Part shown: one piece after another, positions 8,490 to 31,634 of the stretch
How positions within the stretch are numbered: position 1 is the stretch's first letter
How the letters are laid out: each line of letters starts with the position of its first letter
Assembly (NCBI RefSeq): GCF_006345805.1
Contig: NC_043002.1
Coordinates: 4,898,001-4,962,000 of the forward strand
DNA from: Octopus sinensis
Lineage: Eukaryota
Length of the DNA: 64,000 nt
Direction of reading: 5' to 3'
Notes under the pieces: model-generated
Databases searched by the model: none
Told to the model about the DNA's origin: nothing
Seen by the model: only the letters and a program-made list of their open reading frames with translations
Translations under genes and position numbers: made by a program

Positions 8490-8526
<37 letters not shown>

Positions 8527-8555: not shown

Positions 8556-8637
8556 GAAAGGATATTGGTAAGTATGGGTGAAAACTCCAGACATGTTTTA
8601 GCCTTATCAGATCTCCTTTGCAAAGTGTATATGTTTG

Positions 8638-9488: not shown

Positions 9489-9489
9489 T

Positions 9490-11819: not shown

Positions 11820-12281
11820 ATTGCAGTGTGGAAGGTGTTTGTAAGCCATTTAAGAAACACACAAAAACCGTTAGATTCACTTCAACATTTAAATTTAATT
11901 TGTCAAAATGTTTTCATCGCTTTGAGACCGCGACCTGTTCAATGAACAGGTCGCGGTCTCAAAGCGACGAAAATATTTTGACAAATTAAATTTAAATGTT
12001 GACCCCCCCTGGCACCTGTGCAGGTGGCACGTAAAAAGCACCCACTACACTCCTGGAGTAGTTGGCGTTACGAAGGGCATCCAGCTGTAGAAACTCTGCC
12101 AGATCAGACTGGAGCCTGGTGCAGTCCCTGGCTTCCCAGACCCCGGTCGAACCGTCCAACCCGTGCTAGCGCAGAAAACGGACGTTAAACGATGATGATG
12201 ATGATGATGATGATGTTGAAGTGAATCTAACGGTTTTTGTGTGTTTCTTAAATGGCTTACAAACACCTTCCACGCTGCAAT
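11820..12281. repeat. Long palindrome (foldback) interrupted by a SINE
   Basis: Arms 11820-11940 and 11944-12002 + 12214-12281, loop AAT; family C SINE at 12003-12213. Confidence 0.9.
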
Positions 12282-13699
12282 TGTTTTCGTTCCAGCACAC
12301 AATCTCAGATCAAGTCACTCGCTATGCAAGTACATCTCCGTAAAAACAAAATTGCTTGGTTAAAAAAAAAAAGTCAAAGGATTGTCCCCCTTATATAACA
12401 CACAAAAGAAACAGAACAAGACATGACATGTTTTGTGTGTTAAGTTGTCAAATAATCCATAATAACACTTGACAAATAAGGTAACAGGAAACATTATCAC
12501 ATGTACAAAATAAAACAAAGAACGGTGTCAAGAATGCCTGATAACAAAATAATCTGCTCAGCAATGCTACTGATTTAGAAGCCTCCAAAGTGTCTCAAAC
12601 GGCTATTTTTAATATCTGTGCAGTTTTGTTTTTTTTTATCAGATAAACTTGATTTTATTGAAGATATGTTTGTATTTTTTCATTAGTCATGTTGATGAAT
12701 CAACAAATATTTTCTTTAACTAAAACGGGTTTACTCACGCATTATCACGAGCACAGATTAATAATGCTTAAACACTTTTCAAAAAGTGGTGGAGATCTTC
12801 CTATTTTTTGTTTATTTTTTATTATTTACCAGCAAACTACATTACCAATAATAAACAATACATGACTATCATTGCTCTCTTCCCCCCCTCTCTCTCTCTC
12901 TCTCTCCCTAGTTCATGACATTTATTTCTCCTTTTTTACTAGTTTTCTATCTCTACCACTATACCCCTCCATTATTTGGTTTATTCCATTATGCTCTCTC
13001 TCCCTCCCCTCTCTCTTTCTCCCTCTCTCTTTCCCTCTCTTTCTTCCCCTCTCTCTGACCTTGCTTGTCTTGTCTCGAATGAATAGAGGCAGCATAGAAT
13101 AATGATGACTCTTTAGTTTTGCAAGGGACATAGCACCCCCACTAATGCTGGTGCCACAATAAAATGCACCCAATACCCTCTGTAGAGTGATTAGTAAAGA
13201 AATGCAGACAACTTGAAGCCAAGAAGATTATTTTAATCATACCAAAGACAGAACAACATCTCTCATGTTTTTGCCATAATAATATGCATCCAGTTTACTC
13301 TGTAAAGTGTTTAGAATTAGAAAGGACATGCAGCCATCGAAATGATACAAAACAAAATAGAATGTCTGAGCAAGATGTGGTTCTTGACCCATCTAGGCAG
13401 GAAATAGCACCAAATAAGAAGTGATTTAGACTGTGATGGTCAGTCCAGCACACACTAAGATGGGAAGCAGATATAAAATTATGATGATGATGACAATGGC
13501 AATGGCGATGATAGCAATTGTCCACAGCTGTATAAACCTTTTCTTCTCTTATTTGTAACATAGGAATGAACAGCTGGGAAGAATTAATTCCAAGGACCTC
13601 TGCTATTTTTTGTAGTAGAGCTTTCTCAAATGTTTGTGGTCATCGCTAAAGTTTTAGACTTCCAGCTCTGAGATCTTGTCTTCAAATCTTTTGTGTCTT

Positions 13700-13915
13700 T
13701 GTGTCTGTGTTTTGCCTCCCTATCACCACTTGATGACCAGTGCTGGTGTGTTTATGTCCCTGTAACTTAGCGGTTCAGCAAAAGAGACCGATAGAATTAG
13801 CACTAGGCTTTAAAAAATAAGTCCTGGGATCGATTTGTTACACTAAAACCCTTCAAGGTGGTGCTCCAGCATTGCCACAGTCAAATGACTGAAATAAGTA
13901 AAAGAATAAAGAATA
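13700..13915 (+). mobile_element. SINE family B, 3' half
   Basis: CAAAAGAGACCGATAGAAT..GTCAAATGACTGAAA..GTAAAAGA; ends ~45 nt before the exon acceptor. Confidence 0.8.
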
Positions 13916-13962
13916 AAACTTTGTGTATTTATATTTATACATGTATATGTATTCTATTGTAG

Positions 13963-14892
13963 ATCAAACTGGCATCTCTTCTCCACGATGGCTTTCAGAC
14001 AATATCTGCTCTCAGACCACAAGAATACCAAAACTGACTCATGTGACCAATGAAAACAAAGATGAAGATAATGCCTTTCAGGCCATGAACCAATCAGCTA
14101 TGTTCCCTGGCGAGACTTCTTCTAAACCTCATAATAACCAGCCTCAGATAAATTTTTTGCCAAATCCAATTACCAACAATTTTAATAGAAAAACATCATC
14201 ATTAGCATCGTGCTTATCATCTCCTGAAATCCAAATCCAAGAATTTCCATCATCATCTCCTTCAGTTTCTTCATCCCTTCTCAATTTACCCAAAAGACAA
14301 GACAGCTACAGGAACGAGAATGAACTTGCTCCAAATATGACAATTCCACTCCATCATGCCATGGCAGTAGAAGAAAACAATCAAAGAACAATCGATAGGA
14401 TTGAAATTCATTCCTCAGACAATCTAAATTCCTCGTCAGTGAATGGTTTCCAAAAGGCAAACCTAGAAAAAGACTGTATGAATCTCGAGGAAGAAATGAA
14501 TTTAAACTATGATGTCGAGATAAAAGCTGAACCATTTTCGTCTTTTAGCGAAGAAGAAGTTAATCTTCAGAGTAACTGTGCCACTCAGTACGACATATTG
14601 GGGTCTGTGGGGAAAATGAACCAAAATGATGTGAATCAAAGCATTGGTTGTGAAGGTAACATTACTCAGTCTAAAGGAACTATAACGATTGATTTAAATG
14701 GTAAGATTCTTGAGGAGGATACGGATAACATTATGATGTCACAGAAACCACAACTAGGAGAGCAGCAACAGCATCATATGATGCAGCAGCAGCAGCAGTC
14801 GTCAGCTTTGCCGCCAGTAGAGTCTCTTACCGGCAGAATGTTTCTACACCAAATTCCAGTCATCAATCTGCAGAACTGTAACGTAAGGAAAG
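13963..14892 (+). CDS. Internal coding exon of a putative C2H2 zinc-finger transcription factor (low-complexity linker region)
   Basis: 930-nt open frame; acceptor ttctattgtAG at 13961-62 (phase 1); donor AAG|GTAAGG at 14893 (phase 1); psiKxE SUMO-type motif IKAE; polyQ. The ORF beyond 14892 is microsatellite read-through. Confidence 0.75.
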
Positions 14893-15064
14893 GTAAGGAT
14901 TGGAGCTCGGAATGTTCTTGGATGTCTGCATGTTCACTGGCTGTTGATATGGATAGACTGTGTGTGTGTGTGTGTGTGTGTGTGTGCACATGCATGTGTG
15001 TGTGTATGTGCTTGTGTTTGCATATGTTTGTGTGCATGTGTGCGTATGTATGTGTGTATGTACA

Positions 15065-15099
<35 letters not shown>

Positions 15100-15783
15100 T
15101 CTTCTTTTACATGTGTATTGAATACATTACATGTTTTAGTTGACATTTTCCCACCAAGGGGTTTTGTATTTTTGTATGAGCTCATTATAGTTTGTTTGGA
15201 ACAGTAAACAGCAAAGTTCCTAAATCCATTATAAATATTTCTAAACCTTCAAGGCCTCATCTTCAGAATGAAGTGATATTGGTGTGTGTTGTTGCCTCTT
15301 TATAGCTGACAGGGCCCATGTGATGGCTGTTGAATTTTATCTATTAGAGTTATACAGCTAAGTCATCAGCCAGGAATTCTTTTTGTCTGACTGTATATTT
15401 TAACATTGTGTTTAGCTAAAACCATTACTTTTATTTTTAATTATTTGTTTTAGTGGGGAATTCTCTAGAGTATACATGTGCTGTTCACTCATTTTTTCCT
15501 ACATCGTTCTATTTCATGTTAATGTGGCATAGTACACTGCAGTTGTTCCTTGTAAATGCATGGTTAGCTGCCAGGTGAATATCATTTTGGTTTGGCCAAC
15601 ATAACTGCTGGAATCATGAAGTTTACAACTTTCATGTTAGCAATCGGATTTATAAATGATATTAATTATTAGCAGCTCATTAGCAGCTTTACTTGTTTGT
15701 GGTTTGTTTTTAAAATGAAGGTATTTTTTTTATATTTTAGCATCTTAAAATACATATTAGTGTTCATTTATCAATTAGCTTAA

Positions 15784-16003
15784 CCCTTTTGTTACCAACC
15801 TGGCTGAAACCGCTTCTGGCTCTCAGTACAAATGTCTTGTTTTCATAAGTTTTGAATTAAAATCTTCCACCAAACCTTAATCATAATTTATGTTCCTAAT
15901 ACTAGCTGAACGGTAACTATGTTATTTTACTAAATTCTTTGTTATATTTGAAGTAATCGAAAGAAACACAGAGCATATCAAAATAAATACAGTAACAAAA
16001 GGG
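15784..16003. mobile_element. piggyBac-type MITE (220 bp)
   Basis: TTAA at 15780-83 and 16004-07; TIRs CCCTTTTGTTAC / GTAACAAAAGGG. Confidence 0.88.
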
Positions 16004-16334
16004 TTAATGCTTTTTATATTCTGTTTTACAAAGATTTTGATGATGTGTTCATCCATTCTATGATTACATCCATTTTATTAATATGCATTGAAATGATGTA
16101 TTTTATATGTGGTTAGTATATTTTTAATAAGCATAGTATCTGATATATTTGTAGCAGTGTTTCTTCTTGTGTTGTTCTGTTGCTTGGCCTGTCAGTTTGT
16201 TAGAAGGCCTGTGGTTAACTAGTGTTTGTTCAGGAGATTTCGTTATTTAGTGCTTCATTTCTGGAAGAGAATCTAAATGCTTCTTTCTAAGTAAGGATTT
16301 TACCTCTGTCATTTTTTGTTAGTCTAATCAGACA

Positions 16335-16700
16335 CGATCATCATCATTATTGTTTAACATCCGTTTTCCGTGCTAGCACGGGTTGGACAGTTCGACCGGG
16401 GTCTGGGAAGCGAGGAGGCTGCTCCAGGCCCAGTCTGATCTGGCAGTGTTTCTACAGATGGATGCCCTTTCTAACGCCAACCACTCCGAGAGTGTAGTGG
16501 GTGCTTTTTATGTGCCACCGGCACGGAAGCCAGTCAAGGCAGCGCTGGCATCGGCCACGTTTGGATGGTGCATTTTACGTGCCACCGGCACAGGTATCAC
16601 AACTACAATTTCCAATTGATTTTTGATGTTGATGTACTTGACTCAATAGGTCTCCTCAAGCACAGCAGGTCACCCTATATGATATATTTGTTGATTTGTA
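16335..16700 (-). mobile_element. SINE family C
   Basis: Family C core on the minus strand. Confidence 0.75.
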
Positions 16701-16870
16701 TCTGCATGTTTATGCCAAGAAATGGAACATTGTATTGTCAGATTTGATTTCTACTGTTCTGGTTGTTGAATTTTTGTACAGAGTTGTTTTCTAGGTCTTC
16801 TTTTAATTTACCAGCATCTTGCAGTATGGTTATGGCGAGAATAACATCCATATAACTGCTGTATTTACAG

Positions 16871-17286
16871 GTGGCGAGCTGGCAGAAACGTTAGCAAGCC
16901 GGGCGAAATGCGTAGCCATATTTCGTCTGCCGTTACGTTCTGAGTTCAAATTCCGCCGAGGTCGACTTTGACTTTCATCCTTTCGGGGTCGATAAATTAA
17001 GTACCAGTTACGCACTGAGGTCGATATAATCAACTTAATCCGTTTGTCTGTCCTTGTTTGTCCTCTCTGTGTTTAGCCCCTTGTGGGTAGTAAAGAAATA
17101 GGTATTTCGTCTGCCACTATGTTCTGAGTTCAAATTCCGCCGTGGTCGACTTTGCCTTTCATCCTTTCGGGGTCAATAAATTAAGTACCAGTTACTCACT
17201 GGGGTCAATATAATCGACTTAATCCATTTGTCTGTCCTTGTTTGTCTTCTCTATGTTTAGCCCCTTGTGGGTAGTAAAGAAATAAA
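16871..17286 (+). mobile_element. SINE family N with tandem duplication of its 3' three-quarters
   Basis: Full copy 16871-17110, then a repeat of TATTTCGTCTGCC..GTAAAGAAATA to 17286. Confidence 0.85.
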
Positions 17287-17721
17287 TATATTTACAATGC
17301 TTTAGCAGCTTCTTTAAGTATGTTAGCTGGTATGATGAATGGTTTTATCCTTAGGTATTTGTATACATTTTTTAATATAGCTTCTATTGTTTCCGACACT
17401 GAAGTATTGGCAAACAGAATTTCCCCATCTAAGATAGAGATGTTCCCTACACCATTGCTATCTTCAGAGATCTCTTGCAACTCTTCAGATAACTATATAC
17501 TATGCCATTCCATACAAAACTTTACTATGAAGTAAATCCATAGATTTTAGCTGTCACTGCATTTATAATTTCATCATCGTAATTTAACATCCATTTTCCC
17601 TGCTGACATGGGTTTTAAAAGTTAATTAAATGTATTACATTGATTAGACAGTTGTAGATATTTGTCATGTTTATTGTGGACAGTAAAAGAGAGATCATCT
17701 GGGCTCTAGTTTCAAGTGTTA

Positions 17722-19020
17722 AATAATAATAATAATAATAATTGTGTACAGTGCTCAGGTGCACTACAACTCATCTAAAGTGTATATATAATCAGGTGTA
17801 GTTTCGGCGGATTTCGGAAAGCATGAGGGCCTTAAAAGATGCAGTGTCATGGCAGTCAACAACTGACGCAGGCAGTTTATTCCATGCTTCAGCAACTCTG
17901 AGCGTGAAAAAATGTTTCCGAAAGTCATGGGAGCTGTATTGTTTTCTGACTTTGTAGGCATGTCCACGTGTGTTAGACACATGGAGATCAAAAAGGTGTT
18001 CAGTGTTGTTGTTGGTGAGGTGGTTGATAACTTTGTGGGTGTTTACCAAGTCCGTCGCCAAACGCCGGAGCTTCAGTGAATCCATGCCCAGGGAAACAAG
18101 GCGCTCAGAATATGGTAGGTGTCTGATGGAGGGTATGCGTTTGGTTGCACGTCTCTGGACAGATTCCAGGAGGTCAATGTTCTGTGCAAGATAGGGGTTC
18201 CAAACTGATGATGTGAATTCCAAGTGTGGTCGTACCATAGCTGTATACAGTTTTAAATAGATGGCTGGAGAGCGGCTAACAAAAGACCTGCTGAGTGATG
18301 CCAAGACACCCTCGGCCTTCCTGACAATCTTAGAGATATGCTTTGACCAACGCAAATCACTGCTGACAGTGATGCCTAGGTCACGCTCGCAAGAGGATTT
18401 CTTGATATCAGTGTGTGGAGGGAGTATGTGAACGCAGGGTTTTTTCTCCCAAAATGCATGGTGGTACACTTGTCCACAGCCAGTTTCAGTTGCCAGTCTG
18501 TGATCCATTGCTGCATTGTGTCTAGGTCTGATTGCAGGAAAGAGTTGTAGACATCAGGATCTGTCCTCTTGATTTCAAGGTACAGCTTGATGTCGTCTGC
18601 ATATTTCAATACTGTGGCATTCTTTAAATTGGCATCTATGTCGTTAATGTATGCCACAAACAAGAGGGGACCAAGGACAGATCCCTGTGGTACACCCGAT
18701 GACATCTCATATGGTGTAGAGTGCTGTCCTAGAACTGTGACTACCTCCTTTCGGCTGAGGATGAAGGATTTCAACCAGTTAAAAAGGTCATACCCCACAC
18801 CCATTGCAGAGAGTTTCACCATAAGCCTTTTGTGTGGCACAGAGTTGAAAGCCTTAGCAAAGTCAAGGTAGACAACATCCACCCATGAGCCACTGTCAGT
18901 AATCTGAGTAATGTCCTCAAGGAACTCCACAAGCTGGTCACTGCAGCTGGAGTTAGGGACAAATCCATATTGTGAGGGTCGGATGAGACTGTGAGAGCTC
19001 CATTGGTTGTTACATTCCAT
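17722..19020 (-). mobile_element. CR1/L2-type LINE, 5'-truncated, frameshifted RT
   Basis: RT motifs QYGF, YLDFAKAFNSVPH, GVPQGSVLGPLLF, KYADD; C-terminal FFTLRVAEAWNKLP; (TTA)n tail at ~17722-17742. Confidence 0.93.
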
Positions 19021-19262
19021 TGGTACTCATTTAACTTACACTTAACTGAACACTGTCAAAAAGTATTTAAAGCCAGTGTCATTAGGCATAACTTAATTAA
19101 GTGGACTGATTTGAATATTTTATACATTTTTGGCTGTTACTATTAAGTAAATTACTGACCTATCAGCAGTGTTTATTTTTCATTCTAAACTTTACTGTGG
19201 AGTAAATCCATAGATTTTTGATATCATTGTATTTATAAATAAATTAGATTTATTATATATAT

Positions 19263-19580
19263 TAGAGTGGCACCTTGGGCAAGTGTCTTCTACTATAGCC
19301 TCGGGCTGACCAAAGCCTTGTGAGTGGATTTGGCAAACGGAAACTGAAGGAAGCCTGTCGTATATATATATATGTTTGTGTGTCTGTGTTTGTCCCCTCA
19401 ACATCGCTTGACAACCGATGCTGGTGTGTTTACGTCTGCATAACTTAGCGGTTCAGCAAAAGAGACCGATAGAATAAGTACTAGACTTACAAAGAATAAG
19501 TCCTGGGGTCAGTTTGCTCGACTAAAGGCGGTGCTCCAGCGTGGCCGCAGTCAAATGACTGAAACAAGTAAAAGAGTAAA
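19263..19580 (+). mobile_element. SINE family B, 5'-truncated
   Basis: GTGGCACCTTGGGCAAGTGTCTTC..GTAAAAGA. Confidence 0.85.
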
Positions 19581-19934
19581 AGGGAGTCATAAGCATCTTT
19601 CATGTTTATCCAACCTTCCTGTAAGCAGTGAGGCTGTATAGACTCATTGCCAATCACTTTACCTTCCTCTTAACGAACCACTGTGAAATTTATTCAACCC
19701 AACCCTTCAGCATTCAAATTACTCCGTCAAATGTAGTGCTTATTTATTTACATTGCTTTGAATTAATCACGCATTATCTCTTAGCTTTGAGATTTCAGTG
19801 ATGTGCTTGTATTTTTTTAGAATGACATTGTAGGGTAGGTGTGAGAGGCTAGATATCGCCCATTTGAATATAAAACAGGTAGAATATTTGGGCTGGATAT
19901 GGCCAGTTTAAATGCTAAAAGGTTAAAGCTACTC

Positions 19935-20205
19935 TGTTGTGTCTGGGGAGAGTCATTTTCTTTTTGTGCCTTATTTAACACATTCACCGGTAAAATTTCC
20001 ACTTATTTACTTATTTATTTATTGTTCTAAAATTTTTGTTGTATCTTGCAACCTTTTCAATAGTTTTGAGTCAAAACTATTGAAAAGGTTGCAAGACGCA
20101 ACGAAAATTTTAGGAAAATAAAAATAAGAAAAAAGGGGAAATTTTACCGGTGAATGTGTTAAATAAGGCACAAAAAGAAAAGGACTCTCCCTAGACACAA
20201 CAGAA
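19935..20205. repeat. Inverted repeat, ~135-bp arms, 1-nt centre
   Basis: Centre AGTTTTGA-G-TCAAAACT at 20070; family also at 23325-23570 and 55140-55270. Confidence 0.9.
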
Positions 20206-20784
20206 TATGCTTCAACACACGAACTCATATAAAGAATCTTGCAAACTAAATCCAAAAACGAAAGGTTAAAGCTACTGTTAATTAGGTTAATAACAAAATC
20301 AGGTAAACTGATTTCGATATTTTACACGTTTTTGTTTCAGTCTACTCCTTAGTAAAGTTCAGTAAACCCTGTTGATATGTCAGTGATTTATTTAGTAAAA
20401 ATAACTGCCAAAAATATGTCAAATATTCAAATCAATCTGATAACAGTGGCTTTAATTACAATTTGACAGCAGTCAGTTAAGAGATGAATAAGTGAAAACT
20501 GATGTGAGTATATGACATTTGATTCATCTTTAATTGTCCATAAGAGGTTGTATAAATACAACAGATGTTTAAGACTTACAAATGTATTTGATAAATTTGA
20601 TTCATTTATAAATGCAGAGGCAGCTAAAATTTATGAATTCACTCCATAGAAAAGTTTAGTATGAAAAATAAACGCTGCCAACACAGTAATCTACTCACCA
20701 CACCTTTCTTACTGTGTATTTTTGATAATATTGCCTAATTGTTTAGCAATTGTGTGAAAAGTATAATTATTTGAGATATAACTG

Positions 20785-21005
20785 ATCGTGGCCGTTGCCA
20801 GCCTCGCCTGGCACCTGTTACGGTGGTGCGTAAAAAGCACCCACTACACTCACGGAGTGGTTGGCGTTAGGAAGGGCATCCAGCTGTAGAAACATTGCCA
20901 GATCAGACTGGTGCCTGGTGCAGCCTCCTGGCTTCTCAGACCCCGGTCGAACTGTCCAACCCATGCTAGAGTATATACATGGAAAGCGGATGTTAAATGA
21001 TGATT
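20785..21005 (+). mobile_element. SINE family C
   Basis: Family C core. Confidence 0.75.
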
Positions 21006-21474
21006 ATGAGTAGAAGGGGTTTGTTTTGTTTGTACATTTCTGTTTTTAATGTTTTGTCTGTATGTTCTTTGGTTGTGTTGCTTTCGCAGATTCCCATGAC
21101 TCATGTCACCATCTAATTCCATTATTATGAATTTGAATTGGGGGCTGGAGTCATAGTGAATCTTTCATTAAGAGTAGAGTCCACAGTGATCCGTAGGTAG
21201 GAGAGGTGCAGCCGGAGGGTAAATGTCCGAAAGAGAATCCGTAAAGGGTAGATAGAGAGTCCAATGGAGAAGTTCGTGTGTGGTAAGAAATGACAGGATC
21301 AACATCTTTCATCAGCTGATTAAGTAACCATGGAACCATGGATGTGTTGTAGTTATTCTCTTGATAGAGCTTAGTAGCCCTGATTGTCGATCTTCTAAGA
21401 TTCCTCCACTCAGTATCAATGTGAGAAGCACCTTTGGCTCAGTTGAACTCTTCTGCTGCCTCTTCACAATCTAT

Positions 21475-21689
21475 TTCTTTACTACCCACAAGGGGCTAAA
21501 CACAGAAAGGACAGACAAATGGATTAAGTCGACTACATCAACCCCAGTGCATAACTGGTACTTATTTAATCGACCCCGAAAGGATGAAAGGCAAAGTCGA
21601 CCTCGGCAGAATTTGAACTCAGAACGTAGTGGCAGGCGAAATACGGCTAAGCATTTCGCCCGGCGTGCTAACATTTCTGCCAGCTCGCC
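21475..21689 (-). mobile_element. SINE family N with 17-bp TSD
   Basis: TSD GCCTCTTCACAATCTAT at 21458-21474 and 21690-21706. Confidence 0.9.
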
Positions 21690-23002
21690 GCCTCTTCACA
21701 ATCTATCATGTTGCAGTCATGTGACTCTGCTGTATCTCTGGCAGAATGGCTGAACAGGTGCTATACCTTGCCAAAGAACAACCCATGATTATGCAGGGCA
21801 CAGTCGTCACTTCGTGAGGTATTTTCAGAATACCCACAAACCCTATGTACTTGGAAAAATTCTCTTCACTGAAGTGGAAATAAAGAATTCCTATTAGTGT
21901 GCTTCTCACTCTAATTGGATATTATTTATTTCACTTTTGAATAGCAGGTATTATCTTTTGAAATTCTAGTGTTGTGCATATATTGTAGATTGTATACGCA
22001 CATGGGACAATGAATGCCATCGTATATAGTGTCAGTGGTAAAATCCTTTCTAAGAAAGACATTTAGACCCCTCCCCCTGTACAAAAAAAAACACATGCCA
22101 ACTTCATCTCATCTTGAAGATGAAACTATGAAGATCTAGACACATCCATGATGGATTTAGGACTATTGTTTCAAACAAAATGTATGATGTCTGGAAGATG
22201 TGGAAAGAAACCTTGACAAAAATGATAAATATTGAACACAGTTGTGTATACAATACATCTGTTATAAATACACACAACACATACACACACATGTATATAT
22301 ATTTATGTAGTGTTTGGGTAATATTCCATCTAATGAGGTAATGTAATACATATATACACATGCAAAGGACTCGAGTTGACTTACCACCTAAAACTCTGAC
22401 TTGCACCGTGACTAAAACAAAAAGCATTGGTGTTATATCTACCTAGCAATGATTAGCTCTAGGTGGCTTATCATTGAAGAGACACAGGTACAGAAGAAGA
22501 ATGAACATATGAACAGGCAAACAACTGGTATTGGTTTACATTATGGCATTGATATCTCCTAATATAGCAATGGGCATAGTGTCTTGTTTTATATTTGTAT
22601 GTATATATATTTGTTCACAATCATGCCTGACATGGAGGAGGAGAGAAAATAGTAATTCAGTGAAGGAGAAATAGTGAGAGTTATCGCCCTGACTGAGAGG
22701 GAGTGAGAGAAAGTAATAGCAATGAAAGAAAGGAAGGGGTGAAAAAAAATCAGTGTTTCAACTCTGTATGAGTATATGTGTGTATGTGTGTGTGTGTGTA
22801 TACAAGGGAAGTATGTGAATGTTTGTATGTGTGATTATTATGTAACCTTATTTATATATAAAATACTACAATCAGCCATCATTATTGATGCCACGTGGTC
22901 TCAGATAGCCTAAATATAATTGCTGTGTTGTTACAATAGAGTAGACCATAAGAAATAATGAAGTGAAGTGTGCAGGTAGTCTCTTGGTAATATATGCATT
23001 TA

Positions 23003-23170
23003 CCCACTACACTCTCGGAGTGGTTGGCGTTAGGAAGGGCATCCAGCTGTAGAAACTCTGCCAAATCAAGATTGAAGCCTGGTGCAGCCATCTGGTTCGC
23101 CAGCCCAAAGTCAAACCGTCCAACCCATGCTAGCATGGAAAGCGGATAAACGATGATGATGATGATGATG
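23003..23170 (+). mobile_element. SINE family C, 3' part
   Basis: Core plus (GAT)n tail. Confidence 0.8.
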
Positions 23171-23324
23171 TATAAATGCCATAATCATCAGTCCACTTCT
23201 CCATACTATTGTGAGTTGGATGAAACTTTACGATATGTGTGTGTGTGTGTGTGTATTCATGTGTTTTATATGTATAGTTATATAAAGGCATTCAAACATT
23301 AACTGAAAAATCATTAGATTTATT

Positions 23325-23570
23325 CTGTTGTGTCTGGGGAGAGTCATTTTCTTTTTGTGCCTTATTATGTAACACACAGAGTCAAAACTATTGAAAAGGT
23401 TGCAAGACGCAACGGAAATTTTAGGACAATAAAAATAAGAAAAAAGTGGAAATTTTACTGGTGAGTGTGTTACATAATAAGGCACAAAAAGAGAATGACT
23501 CTCCCCAGAAGACAACAGAATATGCTTCAACACACCAACTCATATAAAGAATCTTGCAAACCAAATCCCA
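23325..23570. repeat. Second member of the 19935 inverted-repeat family, shorter inverted arm
   Basis: TTCTGTTGTGTCTGGGGAGAGTCAT.. versus ..ATGACTCTCCCCAGAAGACAACAGAA. Confidence 0.8.
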
Positions 23571-24367
23571 AAACGAAACATTAGATTTATTTTTACAAAG
23601 AAAACTTTAACAATTGTATATGAACATGGTTGTATGGTAAGAAGTTTGTTTCTAAACCACATGGTCCTGGGTTCACTCCCACTATACATCTTCGGCAAGT
23701 GTCTTCTACTGTTGCTTTGGGCCAACCAAAGCTTTGTGAATGGATTTGATAGACAGAAACTGAAAGAAGCCCATTGTATATGTGTATGTGTGTCTATGCT
23801 TGTCTTCCATCACCCCTTGATAAGCAGTGTTGGTTTGCTTACATCCCCATAACCAAGTAGTTTGGCAAAACTGACTGACAAAATTGACTAAAATTCTACA
23901 AGATGGTGCCCCAGCATATATATATAGATATAGATATATAGATATATAGATATATATATATATATAATAATAATAATTATTATAATTATTTGAGGGAATA
24001 TTATTCCTAACTTACAGGGAAAAATTCAATTTAGAAATACTAAATCAAATTTCCCTAAGACAATATACATATATAAAAATTAGGAAAAAAAACACCTTTT
24101 ATCAATTCAAAATGAACAATTAAATTACACCATCTAGAAAATTACATATAATAGAAATATTAATATTAAAATAACAATAAAATCTTTAATATTATTAATA
24201 AGTTTTAAAATATATTCCTATATAGATGGTATAGGAATATCCTTTGAAAGATGAATTCCAAAAGAATGGTTCTATTTTACCTGTAAGTTCCATAACTGAC
24301 GATAATGAGGATAATTTCTCAGAAACATTAGTTATAAATATAATAATAATAATAATAATATATATAT

Positions 24368-24584
24368 ACTCTTTTACTCTTTTAATTGTTTCAGTCATTT
24401 GACTGCTGCCATGCTGGAGCACCACCTTTAGTCGAGCAAATCGACCCCGGGACTTATTCTTTGTAAGCCCAGTACTTATTCTATTGGTCTCTTTTTGCTG
24501 AACCGCAAAGTGATGGGGACATAAACACACCAGCATCGGTTGTCAAGCGATGGTGGGGGGACAAACACAGACACACAAACATAT

Positions 24585-24642
<58 letters not shown>

Positions 24643-24828
24643 TATATATACATATATACATATATATACATATATACGACAGGCTTCTTTTAGTTTCCAT
24701 CTACCAAATCCACTCACAAGGCTTTGGTCGACCCGAGGCTATAGTAGAAGACACTTGCCCAAGATGCCACGCAGTGGGACTGAACCCGGAACCATGTGCT
24801 TGGTAAGCAAGCTACTTACCACACAGCC
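24368..24828 (-). mobile_element. SINE family B with internal (TA)n expansion
   Basis: Reverse-complement family B from the TCTTTTACT tail to the head ACCACACAGCC. Confidence 0.85.
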
Positions 24829-25039
24829 AATATATATATATATATATATAAAATGTTACAGGCACAATCATGGTTGTATGGTTTAAAAGTTTGCTTTACA
24901 GTCACATAGCTTTCAAGATTCTGTCCAACAGTACAACACCTTCAGTATGGGTCTACTATGATAGTTCTCAGTTGACTAATGTTTCATGAGTGCATTTCAT
25001 AAAAGCCATGTACAAGCCCATTGCATGTGTGTGTGTGTG

Positions 25040-25372
25040 CACAATATATATATATATATATAACAGATATATATGTATATAATATATAAGATATATATAT
25101 ATAAGATATGTATATATAATATATAACACATACACATATATATATGATATATTTATAATATATAACATATATATTATATGATATATATATATATATATGT
25201 AATTAATATATATATACATTATATATATATATCATATATAATATATGTATATATATCTTATATAATATATATATATATGCACACACACAGTCATATATAT
25301 AAATATATATATGTATGTATGTATGTATATACTCATATATATATATCATATATCATATATATATATATATGT
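25040..25372. repeat. (TA)n-rich microsatellite upstream of ZnF exon A
   Basis: Direct reading. Confidence 0.9.
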
Positions 25373-25393
25373 AATTCTCTCTATTATTTTCAG

Positions 25394-25740
25394 TGACATC
25401 CACCACAGGACGCAATAAAAAGTCTGTTCCTGCCGTTCTTAGTTCGACCAAACTCTCCAATAATTCAAATAGCAATGCCAGAGGAAAGCTTATCTGCCAG
25501 ACGTGTGGGAAAATTTTCAGATGCCGTTCCTCTTTGTCACGACATAAGTGGCTTCATAGAGAGAAAAGACATCGGTGTTTTGTCTGTAAGAAAGCTTTCC
25601 ATCGCAAAGAACACTTATACCTTCATTTGAAGCGCCATGCGAAGTCTAATGATATCACCTGTCCCATTTGTGCTATGAAAGGCAGTAACCTCCATGCCAT
25701 TGAAGAACACATAAGGCAGTGTCACCAGAATATTTTCTGA
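25394..25740 (+). CDS. Terminal exon A: three C2H2 zinc fingers
   Basis: Acceptor ttattttcAG|TG (phase 1); CQTC..HKWLH, CFVC..HLKRH, CPIC..HIRQCH; TGA 25738-40; AATAAA at ~25842. Confidence 0.85.
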
Positions 25741-25766
25741 ATGGCAAATTTGTAAAGTGTACATAA

Positions 25767-25800
<34 letters not shown>

Positions 25801-26608
25801 AAAAGAGAAAAGCATGTATTTATTCATTATATGTTTGTAAAATAAAATGTAATTGCTTATTTTATTTTCAAACAAGTCTGGATATTTTATTTTATATATT
25901 TTATTGTATTAAAAAAATTAAATTATGAACCATGTATTTGAAGCCTGCGTACTCGTTTCTTTGTTTTCATTGATTAAATGTGTGTCACAGGTGCACCTAA
26001 ATGATAAGAATGTCATTTCAAAATCTGCGATCACCCTCACTCTGCACATCTTGGATAAGAGCCCTTTGTTATAGACTCTACTCGCAAGCCTTGTGAGTAG
26101 ACAGGAACTAGGTAGACACCTTTTAGTTAGCGATCTCCGTGATTTCAAGGTAGTCATTCTAACGAACCTTCAAAGATGGACTCTGCTCAAATCAATTTCG
26201 CTTTAATTTTCTTCATTACGTGACTAATTACTTTATCCAGTATGAACTTACAGTTCGGTGGTGCAATTCATCATGTTTATCAGCGGAAGGAAAAAATTTA
26301 AGCCATAAAAGGGGAAATATAACACAAGTAGTTGAAGTACTCAAACAAGAGTTATCAGAGAAGTAATGATGACAAAACCATGGTGGCAGTGCTATGCCTT
26401 GCCAGGTACCAAAGGTTATTGCAGATAAAATGCGATGTGTGTTTTGAGATAAGTGCACAATAATGCAGATAAACATTTGTAGGCTAAGTTCACGGAGGAG
26501 AGGTGGGATGTCAAGTCACCTGTTGTATTATGGTTGTCATGTTTACCTTTCAGCAAGAGATGTAATGATCAACTTCCATTAACAACTTCATTACTTTAAA
26601 AAATATAT

Positions 26609-26743
26609 GTGTGTGTGTGTGTATGAGATTACACATGTATTATCAATACATGTGTGTGTGTGTATGAGATTATACATATATTATTAATACGTGTGTGTGT
26701 GTGTATGAGATTACACATATATTATTAATACGTGTGTGTGTGT
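26609..26743. repeat. 41-bp minisatellite, three copies
   Basis: GAGATT at 26625, 26666, 26707. Confidence 0.85.
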
Positions 26744-26871
26744 GTAGCCTAACAATCCATAAGTCAGAAAAAATATGTTTGCACTTGTATATTTGTCTAA
26801 GTATTATTAATCCTATTCAGTCACTCTTACCAGTTGATTTTTTTACAGGGTATTGGATATTTCCTCTATAC

Positions 26872-27103
26872 CTATTTCTTTATTGCTCACAAGGGGCTAA
26901 ACACAGAGAGGACAAACAAGGACAGACACACGGATAAAGTTGATTATATCGACCCCAGTGCGTAACTGGTACTTAATTTATCGACCTCAAAAAGATGAAA
27001 GGCAAAGTCAACCTCGGCGGAATTTGAACTCAAAACGTAACGGCAGGTGAAATACAGCTACGCATTTCGCCCAGCATACTAACGTTTCTGCCAGCTTGCC
27101 ACC
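26872..27103 (-). mobile_element. SINE family N
   Basis: Near full-length reverse-complement copy. Confidence 0.8.
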
Positions 27104-27804
27104 TTAATTTTCTCTATACCTGTCATCTCTAAAGGGTATGTGCTGTTAGTTAAACATGCTGTTATTTAATAACCAGTTGTTTAATACGCAGTACAAAGCT
27201 GACTGGAAAGACCAACTGAAATAATAGTGTATACTTTAATTTACACACACACTCACACACACACACACATGTACATGCTTTAATCAGAAAATATTTTCTG
27301 CAAGTGCTAACAAACTCAGAAATTTTAAGCTGTTAGAAGCCTCGACATTAATAAACATTTTCTCAGTGAAGTAAATTAGCATTGGTAGTTAGAGAGCAAT
27401 ACTTACCAAAACTACACAAAGAAGCATAGATGAGAATTCATCACTGTATTCTAAAACTAATATTCTTTATATCCTTGATGTGCCAAAACATACTTGGGTA
27501 AAGTATCTTTCAAGTTTTTCTAAAACGAGGACATATTGAAAATAACTTGTGTTACAGGAATGCTTAGAAAGCCCTGTGTAGAATTTTGAGCAAGCTTTGT
27601 CAAGGAAAGATATTTCAGACTACTAAAATCTCTTAATGGTATTTACCAATAATTAACAAAATGTAGAAGAGAGAAGTGAATTATAATTGGAAAAAAAATA
27701 AATATCATCATCACTTTTCATGATATTCACTACATATCTATATGTTGTATGTGTATGTCTGGGGTTCTGTATAATATACATATACACACATACAAACATA
27801 CATA

Positions 27805-28232
27805 TGTAGTGGATCTTGCAAGCATGAAGTGGATTCGATCCACCATAGCCGAATTTAAATTAACACTGCAACAGAACTTTTTCCACGGTGGAACAAAGGT
27901 TTTTCTGTGACAGCAGTCTGACATTCGCCAAGTGACTAACTGATTTTTGCTTGGGGTGTTCTTGCTTTTATAACTATCTAGGATAGATATATCATTGAGA
28001 ACAATAGATTTAGTTGGTGGTCTTGTTATCTCTATTCTGTTTTTTGGTGAAGTAGAAGAGGTTACAAGGGCCAGGTGGTGAAGACATTATTTCGGCCTAG
28101 CTAAAGGCAATCTGCTGTCACAGAAAAACCATTGTTCCCATTGTTCCACCGTGTTAAAAGTTCTGTTGCAGTGTCAATTTAAATTTGGCTATGGTGGATC
28201 GAATCCACTTCATGCTTGCAAGATCCACTACA
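27805..28232. mobile_element. MITE-like element with ~115-bp imperfect TIRs
   Basis: TGTAGTGGATCTTGCAAGCATGAAGTGGATTCGATCCACCATAGCC.. mirrored at 28111-28232; no clear TSD. Confidence 0.7.
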
Positions 28233-28274
28233 CATTCATTATATATATATATACACACAGACACACAACACACA

Positions 28275-28573
28275 ACTGTCTGGCTTCCGTGCCAGTGGCA
28301 CGTAAAAAGCACCATTTGAGCATGATCGTTACCAGCGTCACCTTACTGGCACATGAGCAAAACATTCGAGCGAGGTTGTTGCCAGTGCCGGTGGCATGTA
28401 AAAGCACCCACTACACTCTCGGAGTGGTTGGCATTAGGAAGGGCATCCAGCTGTAGAAACTCTGTCAGATCAGATTGGAGCCTGATGCAGCCATCTGGTT
28501 CACCAGTCCTCAGTCAAATCGTTTGACCCATGCTAGCATGGAAAGCGGACGTTAAATGATGATGATGATGATG
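28275..28573 (+). mobile_element. SINE family C, long form
   Basis: GTGCCAGTGGCACGTAAAAAGCACC repeats, core and (GAT)n tail. Confidence 0.8.
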
Positions 28574-29385
28574 TTACATACATACAATAGTTACACACAC
28601 ATACATATATAAATCTCTCACAACACAATATGAACTGCTATCTGCTAATTTTCCCTCCTGACAAAGGAAGCCAGTATTATACTGTCTCTATACATCCATT
28701 TATTGGTTCCATATCCATGATTTCTTTCCCATCCCCTATGCTAATTATGAACTTTACAACTATTACATAATTCTCAGCTCCCAGAAACAGCTGTTGAGTT
28801 AGAAGACTATGGATTCTTCCCATAGTCTTCTCTTTTGCTTATACCCCATGTAAAAGTAAATTTATTTGTCAATATATATATAAATATTTATATGCTTATA
28901 TATACATGTTTATCCTGCGAATATGTTTAATTTTTGTATCTTTATATGCCCCTACATATATCTCTATGTGTATATGTATGTATATTTGTATATATTAAGC
29001 CTAATCTTGTTTATCTACATCACTATCTCCATATCACCTCACTTGGATTTCTCTTGTAACCACTCTTTACCCCCAGGGACCTAGACCTTGATTAAGATTT
29101 TAGAGCTTAAGTTCAAATCATTTGAGCACTACGATGTGTTTTCTATATTGAGCATCTCTAAATTTGACCTGTTAACTGTTTACTATATATATATATATAT
29201 ATATAAATTAAATTAGAGTTAAAACCTATTAGAGATAAAGTCTATCACTGCTTGAGTTGCCTAATAGTGGTTTTATCTCTAATTTAATTTATATACTGTG
29301 AAATTTGATTTAATCCTAAATCTAATTTTTCCCTGTAAGTTTGGATATAATCCCTAATATTATTATTATATATATATATATATAT

Positions 29386-30126
29386 ATTATATTAAATTAG
29401 AGATAAAACCACTATTAGGCAAATCATACAATGAAAAACTTAAGCCAATACATAAGATTATTTAATTTATATTATTTAAATATATAACAAAATTATTTAA
29501 AAAATATAATTAATATAACACTACGATCGTTTCATGGCTGTTAATTTCTTTAAATTTTCGTTAGTTTTAACGACTGTCATAACTGGTGAGTTTTTGCATT
29601 TATTTATTTCTCCTAAATTTATATTCTTGACAGGAGCTTGTCAAATTTGTTATGTCAGAATGCTGAGGAAAGTGTCTTCACTCTGTAGTTGTGACTCTTT
29701 ATATTCTAAATTCAAATTTGTTGATGTCACCTTTGACTTTCAATCTTTTAGTGTCAGTAAGATATCTGTAAGATATTTAGAATATAAAGATATAAAGATA
29801 TTTGGAATATAAAGAGTCACAACTACAGAGTGCAAGACACTTTCTTCAGCATTCTGACATAACAAATTTGACAAGCTCCTGTCAAGAATATAAATTTAGG
29901 AGAAATAAATAAATGCAAAAACTCACCAGTTATGACAGTCGTTAAAACTAACGAAAATTTAAAGAAATTAACAGCCATGAAACGATCGTAGTGTTATATT
30001 AATTATATTTTTTTAATAATTTTGTTATATATTTAAATAATATAAATTAAATAATCTTATGTATTGGCTTAAGTTTTTCATTGTATGATTTGCCTAATAG
30101 TGGTTTTATCTCTAATTTAATATAAT
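29386..30126. repeat. Near-perfect inverted repeat, ~325-bp arms, ~90-bp spacer
   Basis: 29386-29710 is the reverse complement of 29801-30126 with few mismatches; flanked by (TA)n. Confidence 0.92.
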
Positions 30127-30202
30127 ATAATATTTTACTATAAAATTGGATTCAATCCTAAATTTGATTTTTCCCTGTAAGTTTGGATTTATTCCCTAAT
30201 AT

Positions 30203-30270
<68 letters not shown>

Positions 30271-30319
30271 ACATACATATATACATAATACATATATATA
30301 TATGTGTCTATATATATAT

Positions 30320-30352
<33 letters not shown>

Positions 30353-30401
30353 TATATGTATGTCTATATATATATGTATGTCTATATTATATATATGTAT
30401 G

Positions 30402-30432
<31 letters not shown>

Positions 30433-30506
30433 TATACCTACATATAGGTATGTATACATATGTATGTATACATACATATATATATAACTTTTTTTATTAT
30501 TTTCAG

Positions 30507-30853
30507 TGACATCCACCACAGGACGCAATAAAAAGTCTGTTCCTGCTGTTCTTAGTTCAAGCAAACTTTCCACCAATTCAAATAACACCAGAGGAAAGTT
30601 TATCTGCCAGACGTGTGGAAAAATTTTCAGATGTCTCTCGTCTTTGTCACGACATAAGTGGCTTCATAGAGAGAAAAGACATCGGTGTTTTGTCTGTAAG
30701 AGAGCTTTCCACCGCAAAGATCACTTATATCTGCATCTAGATCGGCAACATGCAAAGTCTAATGAGATCCCTTGCCCCATATGTGCTATGAAAAGCAACG
30801 ACCTGCATTCTATTTATGAACACATTAGACAATGTCATCAGAATATTTCATGA
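30507..30853 (+). CDS. Terminal exon B: three C2H2 zinc fingers, paralog of exon A
   Basis: Acceptor ttattttcAG|TG (phase 1); ~84% aa identity to exon A by manual count (19 differences in 116 columns); TGA 30851-53; AATAAA at ~30941. Confidence 0.85.
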
Positions 30854-31634
30854 AGAGTTCAAATCGTAAAGTGTACGTGATTTTGTGTATGTGTGAAAAA
30901 AGCGAGGAAAAATGTGTTTTTATTCATTATTCATATGTAAAATAAAATATAATTTTTCATTTTCATTTGAAACAAGTCTGAATATTTTCTGATATTTTTT
31001 ATTACAGTAAAAAATAAATAAATAAATAAAATTATGAAGACATTATTCAAAGTCTACATGTTTGTTTTCTCATTTCCATCTTAATGAGTGATCAAGAAAT
31101 TTGCTCTATAATCAGGTAATTTCTGGTTTGTAATTATTAAATGGCTTGTAATTGTTAAATGGTGGACATAGTCCATTGCCTTTTTTGACACCAGTTCCTG
31201 AACCTTGGATACCTTTAGCAGAGTCCACCCTTTTGTAAACATTTGGGTTAGGTTTCCCAGATTCTCACTCCAGTTTCAGAAACCCTTCAGAAGAGGCCAC
31301 GATTACTGTTTTCCCTTTTATATATGTGTATATAGTACATGTAATGTTTGTTGGAGATGTGTCAGTACTGCTCATAGAATTTATTTTACCATTTTCTAGA
31401 AAATGAAGTTATTAGTCCATTAGTATTCTGAAAGTCTCTGATTATTGACACTTTAACACTTAAACCAACCATATCAGACTCAAATATTTCCATCTGTTCT
31501 ATGTTCGAACCAGCCAGATCCAGCCTCTGACACCTACCCTAAATATAAACAGTTATGACATCGAAATCTCAAAGCTACAAGATATTGCATGATTAATTCA
31601 GAAATAATGTAAATATATAAGCATTACATATGAC

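What the first reader, a model, noticed from the sequence alone, without database searches (positions are those of the whole stretch)
13963..31090. Candidate switchable DNA-binding domain: one upstream exon, two duplicated alternative terminal zinc-finger exons
Seen: the exon ending AAG|GTAAGG at 14892 is phase 1. Two paralogous exons 5.1 kb apart (25394, 30507) both begin ttattttcAG|TG (phase 1) and have no ATG of their own. Each encodes 3 C2H2 fingers and has its own stop, a homologous 3' UTR and an AATAAA. Either junction reads ..[16 protein letters not shown].. in frame. Established: Drosophila BTB-ZF genes (lola, broad, fruitless) diversify DNA binding through mutually exclusive 3' zinc-finger exons, and coleoids have large C2H2 expansions. 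Inference: a convergent or homologous cassette system in a cephalopod-like genome. No BTB exon is visible in the window.
Basis: partly seen in the sequence, partly recalled or inferred. Interest (0 to 1): 0.78.

Follow-up and report, generated by a model that had tools for sequence, protein, structure and literature searches.

The report
Octopus zinc-finger gene, two alternative last exons
This is an octopus transcription-factor gene that can end in either of two duplicated three-zinc-finger exons; public gene models already record both forms, so it is a tidy but ordinary case of alternative last exons.

Summary
The window is Octopus sinensis LOC115213480. Exon 13963-14892 ends in a phase-1 donor. 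Joined to exon A (25394-25740) it translates exactly to residues 47-471 of RefSeq isoform X1 (XP_029638332). Joined to exon B (30507-30853) it gives isoform X2 (XP_029638333). The same pair is annotated in O. bimaculoides and O. vulgaris, so the core claim is already public.

The gene has three coding exons. The first encodes a 46-residue, probably helical motif. It has no BTB domain and lies about 0.2-0.35 kb upstream of the window.

The family occurs across molluscs. Haliotis and a second cephalopod lineage show a single zinc-finger exon. Argonauta has both A- and B-type exons, so the duplication predates the Octopus/Argonauta split.

Both exons are under purifying selection (dN/dS 0-0.16). 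B is the derived copy, with 15 fixed differences. The largest group lies in finger 3, with others in fingers 1-2 and the pre-finger region.

The best reading is an alternative-last-exon pair born by tandem exon duplication, with splice-site choice coupled to polyadenylation. It is not a lola/fruitless/broad-type BTB-ZF array. I saw no RNA reads. Interest is low to moderate.

The parts
13963..14892 (+). Coding exon 2 ('M'). It is 930 nt and encodes a low-complexity, probably disordered 310-residue middle region. The acceptor is tattgtAG| and the donor is AAG|GTAAGG, phase 1.
   Evidence: Identical to residues 47-356 of XP_029638332 and XP_029638333. Orthologous exons lie at L002 25924-26844 and L001 10293-11309.
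14893..25393 (+). Intron 2 as used for isoform X1 (M to A), 10.5 kb. It is full of microsatellites, SINE-like repeats and a reverse-transcriptase fragment.
25394..25740 (+). Terminal exon A, coding part. It has the ancestral-type three C2H2 fingers (finger motifs from first Cys to last His at 25495-25557, 25576-25638 and 25660-25725) and stop TGA at 25738-25740.
   Evidence: It gives RefSeq isoform X1 (P0007). It is 100% identical in protein to O. bimaculoides exon A.
25741..25925 (+). 3' UTR of exon A, extent approximate. AATAAA at 25841-25846 and ATTAAA at 25908 and 25917.
   Evidence: The cleavage site was not determined.
30507..30853 (+). Terminal exon B, coding part. It is the derived paralogue with three C2H2 fingers (finger motifs from first Cys to last His at 30605-30667, 30686-30751 and 30773-30838). 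Finger 2 has H-x4-H after a one-codon insertion. Stop TGA at 30851-30853.
   Evidence: It gives RefSeq isoform X2 (P0001). Orthologues lie at L002 36332-36679 and L001 20308-20655.
30854..31035 (+). 3' UTR of exon B, extent approximate. AATAAA at 30941-30946, homologous to the A site, and an (AATA)n run at 31013-31030.
25165..25916 (+). Duplicated block, copy 1: intron flank, exon A and proximal UTR.
   Evidence: Self-BLAST. 25165-25781 matches 30271-30895 at 81.8%, and 25815-25916 matches 30915-31014 at 79%.
30271..31014 (+). Duplicated block, copy 2: intron flank, exon B and proximal UTR.
1..13962 (+). Most of intron 1. The first coding exon (46 residues, MSGDLMGMKENF...HGCMIL) is not in the window. 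By collinearity with O. bimaculoides it lies about 200-340 bp upstream of base 1.
   Evidence: tblastn finds no N-exon in the window. Window 25-66 aligns to L002 10363-10408, and the N exon is at L002 10001-10138.

Best explanation
The region is the 3' two-thirds of one protein-coding gene, Octopus sinensis LOC115213480. The gene belongs to a mollusc-wide family of small transcription-factor-like proteins. Each member has a 46-residue N-terminal helical motif, a long disordered middle and three C-terminal C2H2 fingers.

In an ancestor of Octopus and Argonauta the last exon was duplicated in tandem, together with about 0.2 kb of intron and the proximal 3' UTR. The gene now has two alternative last exons.

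The phase-1 donor at 14892 is joined either to the proximal acceptor at 25394 or to the distal acceptor at 30507. In the first case the transcript is cleaved and polyadenylated after exon A, giving isoform X1. In the second case the A acceptor and A poly(A) site are skipped, giving isoform X2. This is the classic competition between splicing and polyadenylation that governs alternative last exons.

The two proteins differ only in the last 115 residues. A keeps the ancestral finger sequence. B carries derived changes that have stayed fixed since before the Octopus/Argonauta split:
- finger 1, helix position +1: R>L
- finger 2: K>R, and +2 E>D
- finger 2 zinc ligands: H-x3-H becomes H-x4-H, with K>D
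- finger 3: -1 N/T>D, +3 A/V>S, +5 E>Y

The likely consequence is two versions of the same factor with modestly different DNA-binding preference or affinity.

Shown here: exon structure, exact match to the annotated isoforms, age of the duplication, purifying selection, and which copy is derived.

Inferred: that both junctions are used in vivo (rests on RefSeq models and on selection, since I saw no reads), the splicing/polyadenylation competition, and any difference in DNA binding.
For: - Exact identity of M+A and M+B translations to XP_029638332 and XP_029638333.
- The same isoform pair is annotated in O. bimaculoides (XP_014788088 / XP_052824697, and UniProt A0A0L8FP94 / A0A0L8FQ36) and in O. 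vulgaris (CAI9724980 / CAI9724978).
- Both exons are present, intact and carry a polypyrimidine-CAG|T acceptor in O. sinensis, O. bimaculoides and Argonauta hians.
- Purifying selection on both. O. sinensis versus O. bimaculoides: A dN/dS 0 (dS 0.12), B 0.06. Octopus versus Argonauta: A 0.155-0.165, B 0.114-0.140.
- Fifteen columns separate all A from all B. For most of them, including R>L, K>R, E>D, the one-codon insertion and E>Y, the outgroups carry the A state, so B is derived and its changes are old.
- Haliotis has the same three-exon structure with a single finger exon and no second copy in the 10 kb downstream.
- A second cephalopod lineage shows one C-terminus in about 30 spliced transcript contigs, and one finger exon in a genomic contig.
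- No N- or M-type exon and no other C2H2 motif lies between or after A and B in the window.
- An in-frame stop lies 21 nt upstream of each exon.
- AATAAA lies at homologous positions after both stops and is conserved in O. bimaculoides.
Against: - No RNA-seq, Iso-Seq or 3'-end data could be inspected here. Use of each junction rests on third-party gene models, and some names in the O. vulgaris set look transferred by homology.
- The transcript assemblies reachable through the tools contained no Octopus contig spanning either junction.
- The supplements of the one Iso-Seq paper checked did not mention the locus.
- Base-contact residues -1, 2, 3 and 6 are identical in finger 1 and differ only E>D in finger 2. 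A real change of specificity is therefore not assured, and the isoforms could be largely redundant.
- Argonauta exon A has no AATAAA or ATTAAA within 1.3 kb of its stop, so the poly(A) arrangement is not uniformly conserved.
Confidence: 0.85

Rival explanations
1. Exon B is a conserved-looking but unused duplicate (a pseudo-exon). On this view the X2 isoforms are homology-driven predictions and only M>A is made.
For: No reads were seen here. Gnomon can build models partly from protein similarity. Argonauta's B-type exon is not represented by any protein returned.
Against: - B has stayed intact in three species across a divergence with dS of about 0.7-0.9. It keeps an open frame, a stop, a conserved acceptor and dN/dS of 0.06-0.14.
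- Its derived residues are themselves conserved between Octopus and Argonauta.
- An unused exon would have decayed.
- Both isoforms were present in the first O. bimaculoides NCBI annotation (XP_014788088 and XP_014788090); UniProt also lists both (A0A0L8FP94, A0A0L8FQ36).
Confidence: 0.06
2. A and B belong to separate transcription units. On this view B is the last exon of a partial gene duplicate with its own promoter and upstream exon(s).
For: A has its own stop and poly(A) signal, so a transcript could end there and a new one could start downstream.
Against: - The 4.8 kb between A and B holds no copy of the N or M exon and no other finger motif.
- B has no ATG, and an in-frame stop lies 21 nt upstream.
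- The duplicated block is only about 750 bp.
- The phase-1 acceptor is preserved in all three species and matches the M donor.
Confidence: 0.03
3. Both isoforms are made but are functionally equivalent in DNA binding. On this view the pair is kept for regulatory reasons, such as different 3' UTRs, stability, localisation or dosage, and not as a switch of the DNA-binding domain.
For: - The proteins are 85% identical.
- Canonical contact residues of fingers 1-2 are almost unchanged.
- The 3' UTRs differ beyond the first ~180 nt.
- Alternative last exons commonly act through their UTRs (general knowledge).
Against: - The B-specific substitutions have been fixed for the whole octopod history sampled. 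The largest group lies in finger 3 and the residue before it, with others in finger 2 and its zinc-ligand spacing and in finger 1: H-x3-H>H-x4-H, and finger 3 at -1, +3 and +5.
- The dS pattern suggests gene conversion homogenised the 5' half of the exon. Fingers 2-3 were kept distinct, as expected if the protein difference is selected (small samples).
Confidence: 0.3

Closest known systems
Drosophila BTB-ZF loci lola, fruitless and broad (and mod(mdg4)), which have alternative 3' exons encoding different zinc fingers
   Same: Common 5' coding exons are joined to one of several 3' exons. Each 3' exon encodes its own C2H2 fingers, stop codon and poly(A) site. The output is a set of transcription-factor isoforms that differ only in the DNA-binding end.
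   Different: - There is no BTB/POZ domain. The N-terminus is a 46-residue motif found in molluscs.
- There are only two alternatives, against 4 to about 20-30.
- The alternatives are recent-looking paralogues, 85% identical, rather than divergent finger pairs.
- Each has three fingers.
- No sign or need of trans-splicing.
- The systems are not homologous. At most this is a loose functional parallel.
Alternative last exons created by tandem exon duplication. This is a general class. One studied 3' variable region is Drosophila PGRP-LC (PMC6191721, from its abstract, seen).
   Same: - A shared donor.
- Duplicated homologous 3' exons in the same phase.
- Choice between a proximal and a distal terminal exon.
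   Different: No competing RNA pairings or other regulatory elements were identified here. Apart from the exons, BLAST conservation between Octopus and Argonauta is confined to about 35-60 nt upstream of each acceptor.
Mollusc orthologues of the same gene. They carry inconsistent automatic names: Haliotis rubra 'A-agglutinin anchorage subunit-like', Mytilus 'early growth response factor homolog 1-like', Argopecten 'specificity protein transcription factor 3-like' and Potamilus KAK3597046.
   Same: - The same N-terminal motif (QPWILSHF.MWLDLK[VI]AEYKV).
- The same C-terminal three-finger block, with the short H-(G/R)EK(R/K)-x-x-C linker.
- In Haliotis, the same three-coding-exon structure.
   Different: Haliotis has a single terminal finger exon. 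The other species were not examined at the DNA level.
Coleoid C2H2 zinc-finger gene expansion (from general knowledge of the O. bimaculoides genome paper; not tested here)
   Same: A C2H2 protein in an octopus genome.
   Different: This gene has three fingers and orthologues across molluscs. Within the loci examined it is not a lineage-specific many-finger tandem array.

Membership tests
BTB-ZF alternative-finger loci (lola / fruitless / broad type) | N-terminal BTB/POZ domain in the common exons | tested here: not met
   A Pfam scan of the full-length isoform (P0007, 471 aa) and of the Haliotis and second-cephalopod orthologues gives no BTB hit. The first exon encodes only 46 residues.
BTB-ZF alternative-finger loci (lola / fruitless / broad type) | Several alternative 3' exons, each with its own C2H2 fingers, stop and poly(A) signal | tested here: met
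   There are two such exons at 25394-25740 and 30507-30853, each followed by AATAAA. There are only two. No third copy exists in the window or in L001 or L002.
Alternative last exons from tandem exon duplication | Homologous terminal exons in tandem, in the same phase, sharing one upstream donor | tested here: met
   They share 85% aa and 86% nt identity in the coding part. Both have ttattttcAG|TG acceptors compatible with the phase-1 donor at 14892. The duplicated block is about 750 bp.
Alternative last exons from tandem exon duplication | Both junctions present in mature mRNA | not testable with these tools
   No read data are reachable. Indirect support comes from RefSeq isoforms X1 and X2 in two species plus the O. 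vulgaris annotation, and from purifying selection on both exons.
Alternative last exons from tandem exon duplication | Separate cleavage/polyadenylation site after each exon | tested here: inconclusive
   AATAAA lies 88-101 nt after each stop at homologous positions and is conserved in O. bimaculoides. The hexamer occurs about once per kb by chance. It is absent for 1.3 kb after Argonauta exon A. No 3'-end data are available.
Classical C2H2 zinc fingers | C-x2-C-x12-H-x3-5-H spacing with sequence similarity to known fingers | tested here: met
   There are three motifs per exon. phmmer against PDB finds ZNF568 at E=1e-22, and also Aart and ZBTB20. Pfam zf-C2H2 scores 24.8 bits for exon A alone, just under the 25.2 cutoff, and 29.2 bits for the Haliotis orthologue. 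Finger 3 is atypical: it is H-x4-H and lacks the usual aromatic residue.
Mutually exclusive exons in the strict sense (internal cassette clusters) | Alternative exons are internal and flanked by a common downstream exon | tested here: not met
   Both exons end in stop codons, and no strong consensus donor was found within either coding exon or its proximal 3' UTR (GT[AG]AG matches lack the flanking consensus). They are terminal.
Coleoid lineage-specific C2H2 expansion | Many-finger genes in lineage-specific tandem clusters without orthologues outside cephalopods | tested here: not met
   There are three fingers only. Orthologues with the same N-terminal motif exist in gastropods and bivalves.

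The most novel reading that the evidence does not exclude
Octopods may have kept a minimal, BTB-less analogue of the insect alternative-finger system since before the Octopus/Argonauta split. One mollusc-specific transcription factor would have two terminal exons giving genuinely different DNA-binding specificities, differing in finger 2 ligand spacing and the finger 3 recognition helix. Gene conversion would keep the splice acceptor, pre-finger region, finger 1 and proximal UTR alike, while selection holds fingers 2-3 apart. The isoform choice would be tissue- or stage-specific.
Probability: 0.3. Interest if true: 0.4.

Novelty: already known. Interest (0 to 1): 0.2.

Why it matters
The finding matters little beyond this gene. 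It is a clean example of a transcription factor acquiring a second, slightly different DNA-binding end through tandem duplication of its last exon.

Three points here appear not to be in the annotation or literature I could search:
- The duplication predates the Octopus/Argonauta split, and a B-type exon that matches no protein returned here exists in Argonauta.
- B is the derived copy, with conserved changes in fingers 2-3.
- The flanks look homogenised by gene conversion.

If the two finger sets bind different sites, the gene would be a convenient small model for how isoform-specific DNA binding evolves. It would also be a candidate for tissue-specific regulation in octopods. The function of the whole mollusc family is unknown, and its automatic names (MSN2-, RPH1-, Sp3-, EGR-like) are inconsistent and should not be trusted.

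Tried and rejected
- BTB hypothesis. Pfam on the M exon, both terminal exons and three full-length family members gave no BTB hit. Rejected.
- Search for the first coding exon inside the window by tblastn found nothing. Collinearity places it just upstream of base 1.
- Profile search with the junction-plus-finger alignment A1. It returned only distant finger ORFs and, oddly, not the known orthologues. It gave no transcript evidence.
- Search with the N-terminal 64 residues. It gave three short hits only, so the range of the N-terminal motif outside molluscs remains unknown.
- Exhaustive HMMER profile search. It was swamped by poly-zinc-finger proteins. Only P0002, P0006, P0061, P0164 and P0045 are full-architecture relatives, and all are molluscs.
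- AlphaFold on a 5-sequence alignment. Mean pLDDT was 37. The N-terminus was predicted as two helices at pLDDT 53-66. This was too weak for a fold search, so none was run.
- Literature. No paper mentions either LOC identifier. The supplements of the O. vulgaris Iso-Seq paper held as text do not mention the locus. General searches found nothing on this gene.
- Rfam and tRNA scans of the window found nothing.
- Independent duplications in Octopus and Argonauta. I rejected this because 15 A/B-diagnostic columns, including a one-codon insertion, are shared by B exons of both lineages.
- Docking/selector RNA pairings of the PGRP-LC or Dscam type. I considered these but did not test them. The introns are dominated by microsatellites and SINE-like repeats, and no intronic block away from the acceptors is conserved with Argonauta.


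Full report
**1. What is in the sequence**

Window 13963-14892 is an open frame of 309 codons plus split codons. It is preceded by ...ctattgtAG| and ends ...AGG AAA G|GTAAGG, a phase-1 donor.

The 18-mer TTATTTTCAGTGACATCC occurs exactly twice, so two exons begin at 25394 and 30507. With the G carried over from the donor, each reads [10 protein letters not shown]... for 115 residues. Each ends in TGA, at 25738-25740 and 30851-30853.

An in-frame stop lies 21 nt upstream of each exon, and neither has an initiator ATG. Each exon contains three C-x2-C-x12-H-x3/4-H motifs. These six are the only such motifs in any frame of the 64-kb window.

Self-BLAST shows the duplicated block is short: about 25165-25916 versus 30271-31014 at 79-82% identity. 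It covers some intron flank, the exon and about 180 nt of 3' UTR. AATAAA sits at homologous positions, 25841 and 30941.

**2. What it is**

A protein search with M+A returned Octopus sinensis 'uncharacterized protein LOC115213480 isoform X2'. Its 90% cluster holds these members:
- isoform X1 of the same gene
- isoforms X1 and X2 of O. bimaculoides LOC106882044
- three O. vulgaris proteins

The window's M+A translation is identical to residues 47-471 of XP_029638332 (X1). M+B is identical to residues 47-471 of XP_029638333 (X2).

The window is therefore O. sinensis, and the proposed gene model already exists in RefSeq. O. vulgaris differs at NENDLAPN, where the window has NENELAPN.

The gene has three coding exons:
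- N: 46 residues, MSGDLMGMKENFTSMVQKVQPWILSHFMMWLDLKVAEYKVHGCMIL
- M: the middle exon described above
- A or B: the terminal finger exon

N is not in the window. Window 25-66 aligns to O. bimaculoides L002 10363-10408, and the N exon sits at L002 10001-10138. N should therefore lie about 200-340 bp upstream of window base 1.

No BTB/POZ or any other Pfam domain is found outside the fingers. A low-confidence AlphaFold model (mean pLDDT 37) predicts N as two helices and M as disordered.

**3. Relatives and age of the duplication**

Orthologous loci were fetched for O. bimaculoides (L002) and Argonauta hians (L001).

| Locus | N exon | M exon | A exon | B exon |
|---|---|---|---|---|
| L002 (O. 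bimaculoides) | 10001 | 25924-26844 | 32515-32862 | 36332-36679 |
| L001 (Argonauta hians) | 10001 | 10293-11309 | 15104-15451 | 20308-20655 |

Both loci have N, M and two terminal exons in the same order. In Argonauta the second exon matches no protein returned by my searches. It is nonetheless intact, with a ...tcgtttcAG|TG acceptor and a stop.

Haliotis rubra (L004) has the same N/M/finger architecture. It has only one finger exon and nothing similar in the next 10 kb.

A second, unnamed cephalopod lineage is about 34% identical overall. It shows a single C-terminus in about 30 spliced transcript contigs. It also shows a single finger exon in a genomic contig, L005, although only 3.8 kb downstream could be inspected.

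Full-architecture relatives also exist in Argopecten, Mytilus and Potamilus. The family is therefore mollusc-wide. The duplication arose after the split from that second cephalopod lineage and before the Octopus/Argonauta split.

**4. Selection and direction of change**

| Comparison | Exon A dN/dS | Exon B dN/dS |
|---|---|---|
| O. sinensis vs O. bimaculoides | 0 (dS 0.12) | 0.06 (dS 0.18) |
| Octopus vs Argonauta | 0.155-0.165 | 0.114-0.140 |

A versus B within Octopus gives about 0.14-0.15. Both exons are under purifying selection.

Fifteen alignment columns separate all A from all B exons. For most of them, including those listed here, the outgroups (second cephalopod, Haliotis, Argopecten, Potamilus) carry the A state; a few columns (19, 27, 29, 99, 100) are ambiguous. 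B is therefore the derived copy. Its changes are:
- finger 1, helix +1: R>L
- finger 2: K>R, and +2 E>D
- finger 2 zinc ligands: H-LKR-H becomes H-LDRQ/H-H, a one-codon insertion giving H-x4-H
- T/S>P just before finger 3
- finger 3: GSN>SND (position -1 N/T>D), +3 A/V>S, +5 E>Y

The canonical contact positions -1, 2, 3 and 6 are unchanged in finger 1. In finger 2 they differ only by E>D. They differ at -1 and +3 in finger 3. The assignment of helix positions follows the standard Zif268 numbering, which is established knowledge and was not tested here.

In Argonauta B the Cys of ..RQCH is Tyr. The fourth zinc ligand of finger 3 is therefore the His, giving H-x4-H.

**5. An evolutionary wrinkle**

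Within Octopus, synonymous divergence between A and B is low in the first 60 codons (0.08-0.39) and high in fingers 2-3 (0.65-1.9).

The A and B 3' UTRs align with each other within Octopus, but not with their Argonauta orthologues.

Overall dS(A,B) in Octopus is 0.45-0.6. That is lower than dS between Octopus and Argonauta A exons, 0.68-0.74.

The simplest reading is gene conversion that homogenised the flanks and the 5' part in the Octopus lineage, while the isoform-specific residues in fingers 2-3 were retained. The segments are short, so this is an inference and not a demonstrated result.

**6. Mechanism**

The anatomy is that of alternative last exons:
- one donor
- two acceptors of similar strength (pyrimidine fraction 0.73 for both)
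- a stop and a putative poly(A) signal after each exon

Use of A requires pairing 14892 with 25394 and cleavage after A. Use of B requires skipping the A acceptor and reading through the A poly(A) site. This step is inferred from general knowledge of such genes.

No regulatory element was identified. Outside the exons, BLAST conservation between Octopus and Argonauta is limited to about 35-60 nt upstream of each acceptor.

**7. Comparison with known systems**

The parallel with lola, fruitless and broad is functional at most. The differences are:
- no BTB domain
- only two alternatives
- the alternatives are 85% identical

The gene is also not part of the coleoid C2H2 expansion. It fits the general, well-known class of tandem exon duplication producing alternative terminal exons.

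The O. vulgaris transcriptome study reports no major departure of octopus from other invertebrates in alternative splicing or polyadenylation (PMC9699675).

**8. Limits**

- I could not inspect reads, so transcription of both junctions rests on public gene models and on selection.
- The species identities of P0004 and L005 are unknown.
- The range of the N-terminal motif outside molluscs is unknown.

**9. Verdict**

The object is already annotated in public databases. The evolutionary details are new but modest. Interest is about 0.2.

Noticed in passing
window 1172-5177: A 121-bp satellite in 33 tandem copies, with a higher-order period of 483 bp and 84-89% matches. It lies inside intron 1 of the gene. 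O. bimaculoides has about one copy at the homologous place (L002 10442-10565), next to an assembly gap.
   Followed up: partly
window 67-1140: An insertion relative to O. bimaculoides. It carries a minus-strand ORF at 440-868 (142 aa, acidic and Ser-rich) with no Pfam match. It is probably a fragment of a mobile element.
   Followed up: partly
window 56833-57801 (+): An intronless-looking 322-residue ORF with a C-terminal bZIP_2 domain (E=8e-7, residues 258-307). It is a separate C/EBP-like bZIP gene about 26 kb downstream of exon B.
   Followed up: partly
window 17792-19020 (-) and 36803-38165 (+): Reverse-transcriptase (RVT_1) ORF fragments of non-LTR retrotransposons. One lies inside intron 2 and one lies downstream of the gene.
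   Followed up: partly
window 24366-24850 and at least 8 other sites (e.g. 10458-10829, 19267-19582, 33546-33928, 44717-45136, 53244-53651); also 26868-27107 and its copies: Two families of short interspersed repeats at 80-92% identity, in both orientations, scattered through the introns and flanks.
   Followed up: no
L001 20308-20655 (Argonauta hians, BAAFZT010000004.1): An intact B-type terminal exon 5.2 kb downstream of the annotated last exon. No Argonauta protein containing it was returned, so it appears unannotated.
   Followed up: yes
L001 10139-10292 versus window / L002 intron 1: Intron 1 is 154 bp in Argonauta but about 14-16 kb in O. sinensis and O. bimaculoides. Intron 2 to exon A is 3.8 kb in Argonauta, 5.7 kb in O. 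bimaculoides and 10.5 kb in O. sinensis. This is repeat-driven intron growth in Octopus.
   Followed up: partly
window 25394-25570 vs 30507-30680, and the 3' UTRs 25741-25916 vs 30854-31014: Mosaic similarity between the paralogous exons. The 5' part and UTR are more alike than fingers 2-3, and more alike than the Octopus-Argonauta orthologues. This suggests gene conversion in the Octopus lineage.
   Followed up: partly
window 14955-15095: Long (TG)n/(TGTA)n and (GA)n microsatellites begin about 60 nt after the exon-M donor. They create spurious long ORFs on both strands.
   Followed up: no
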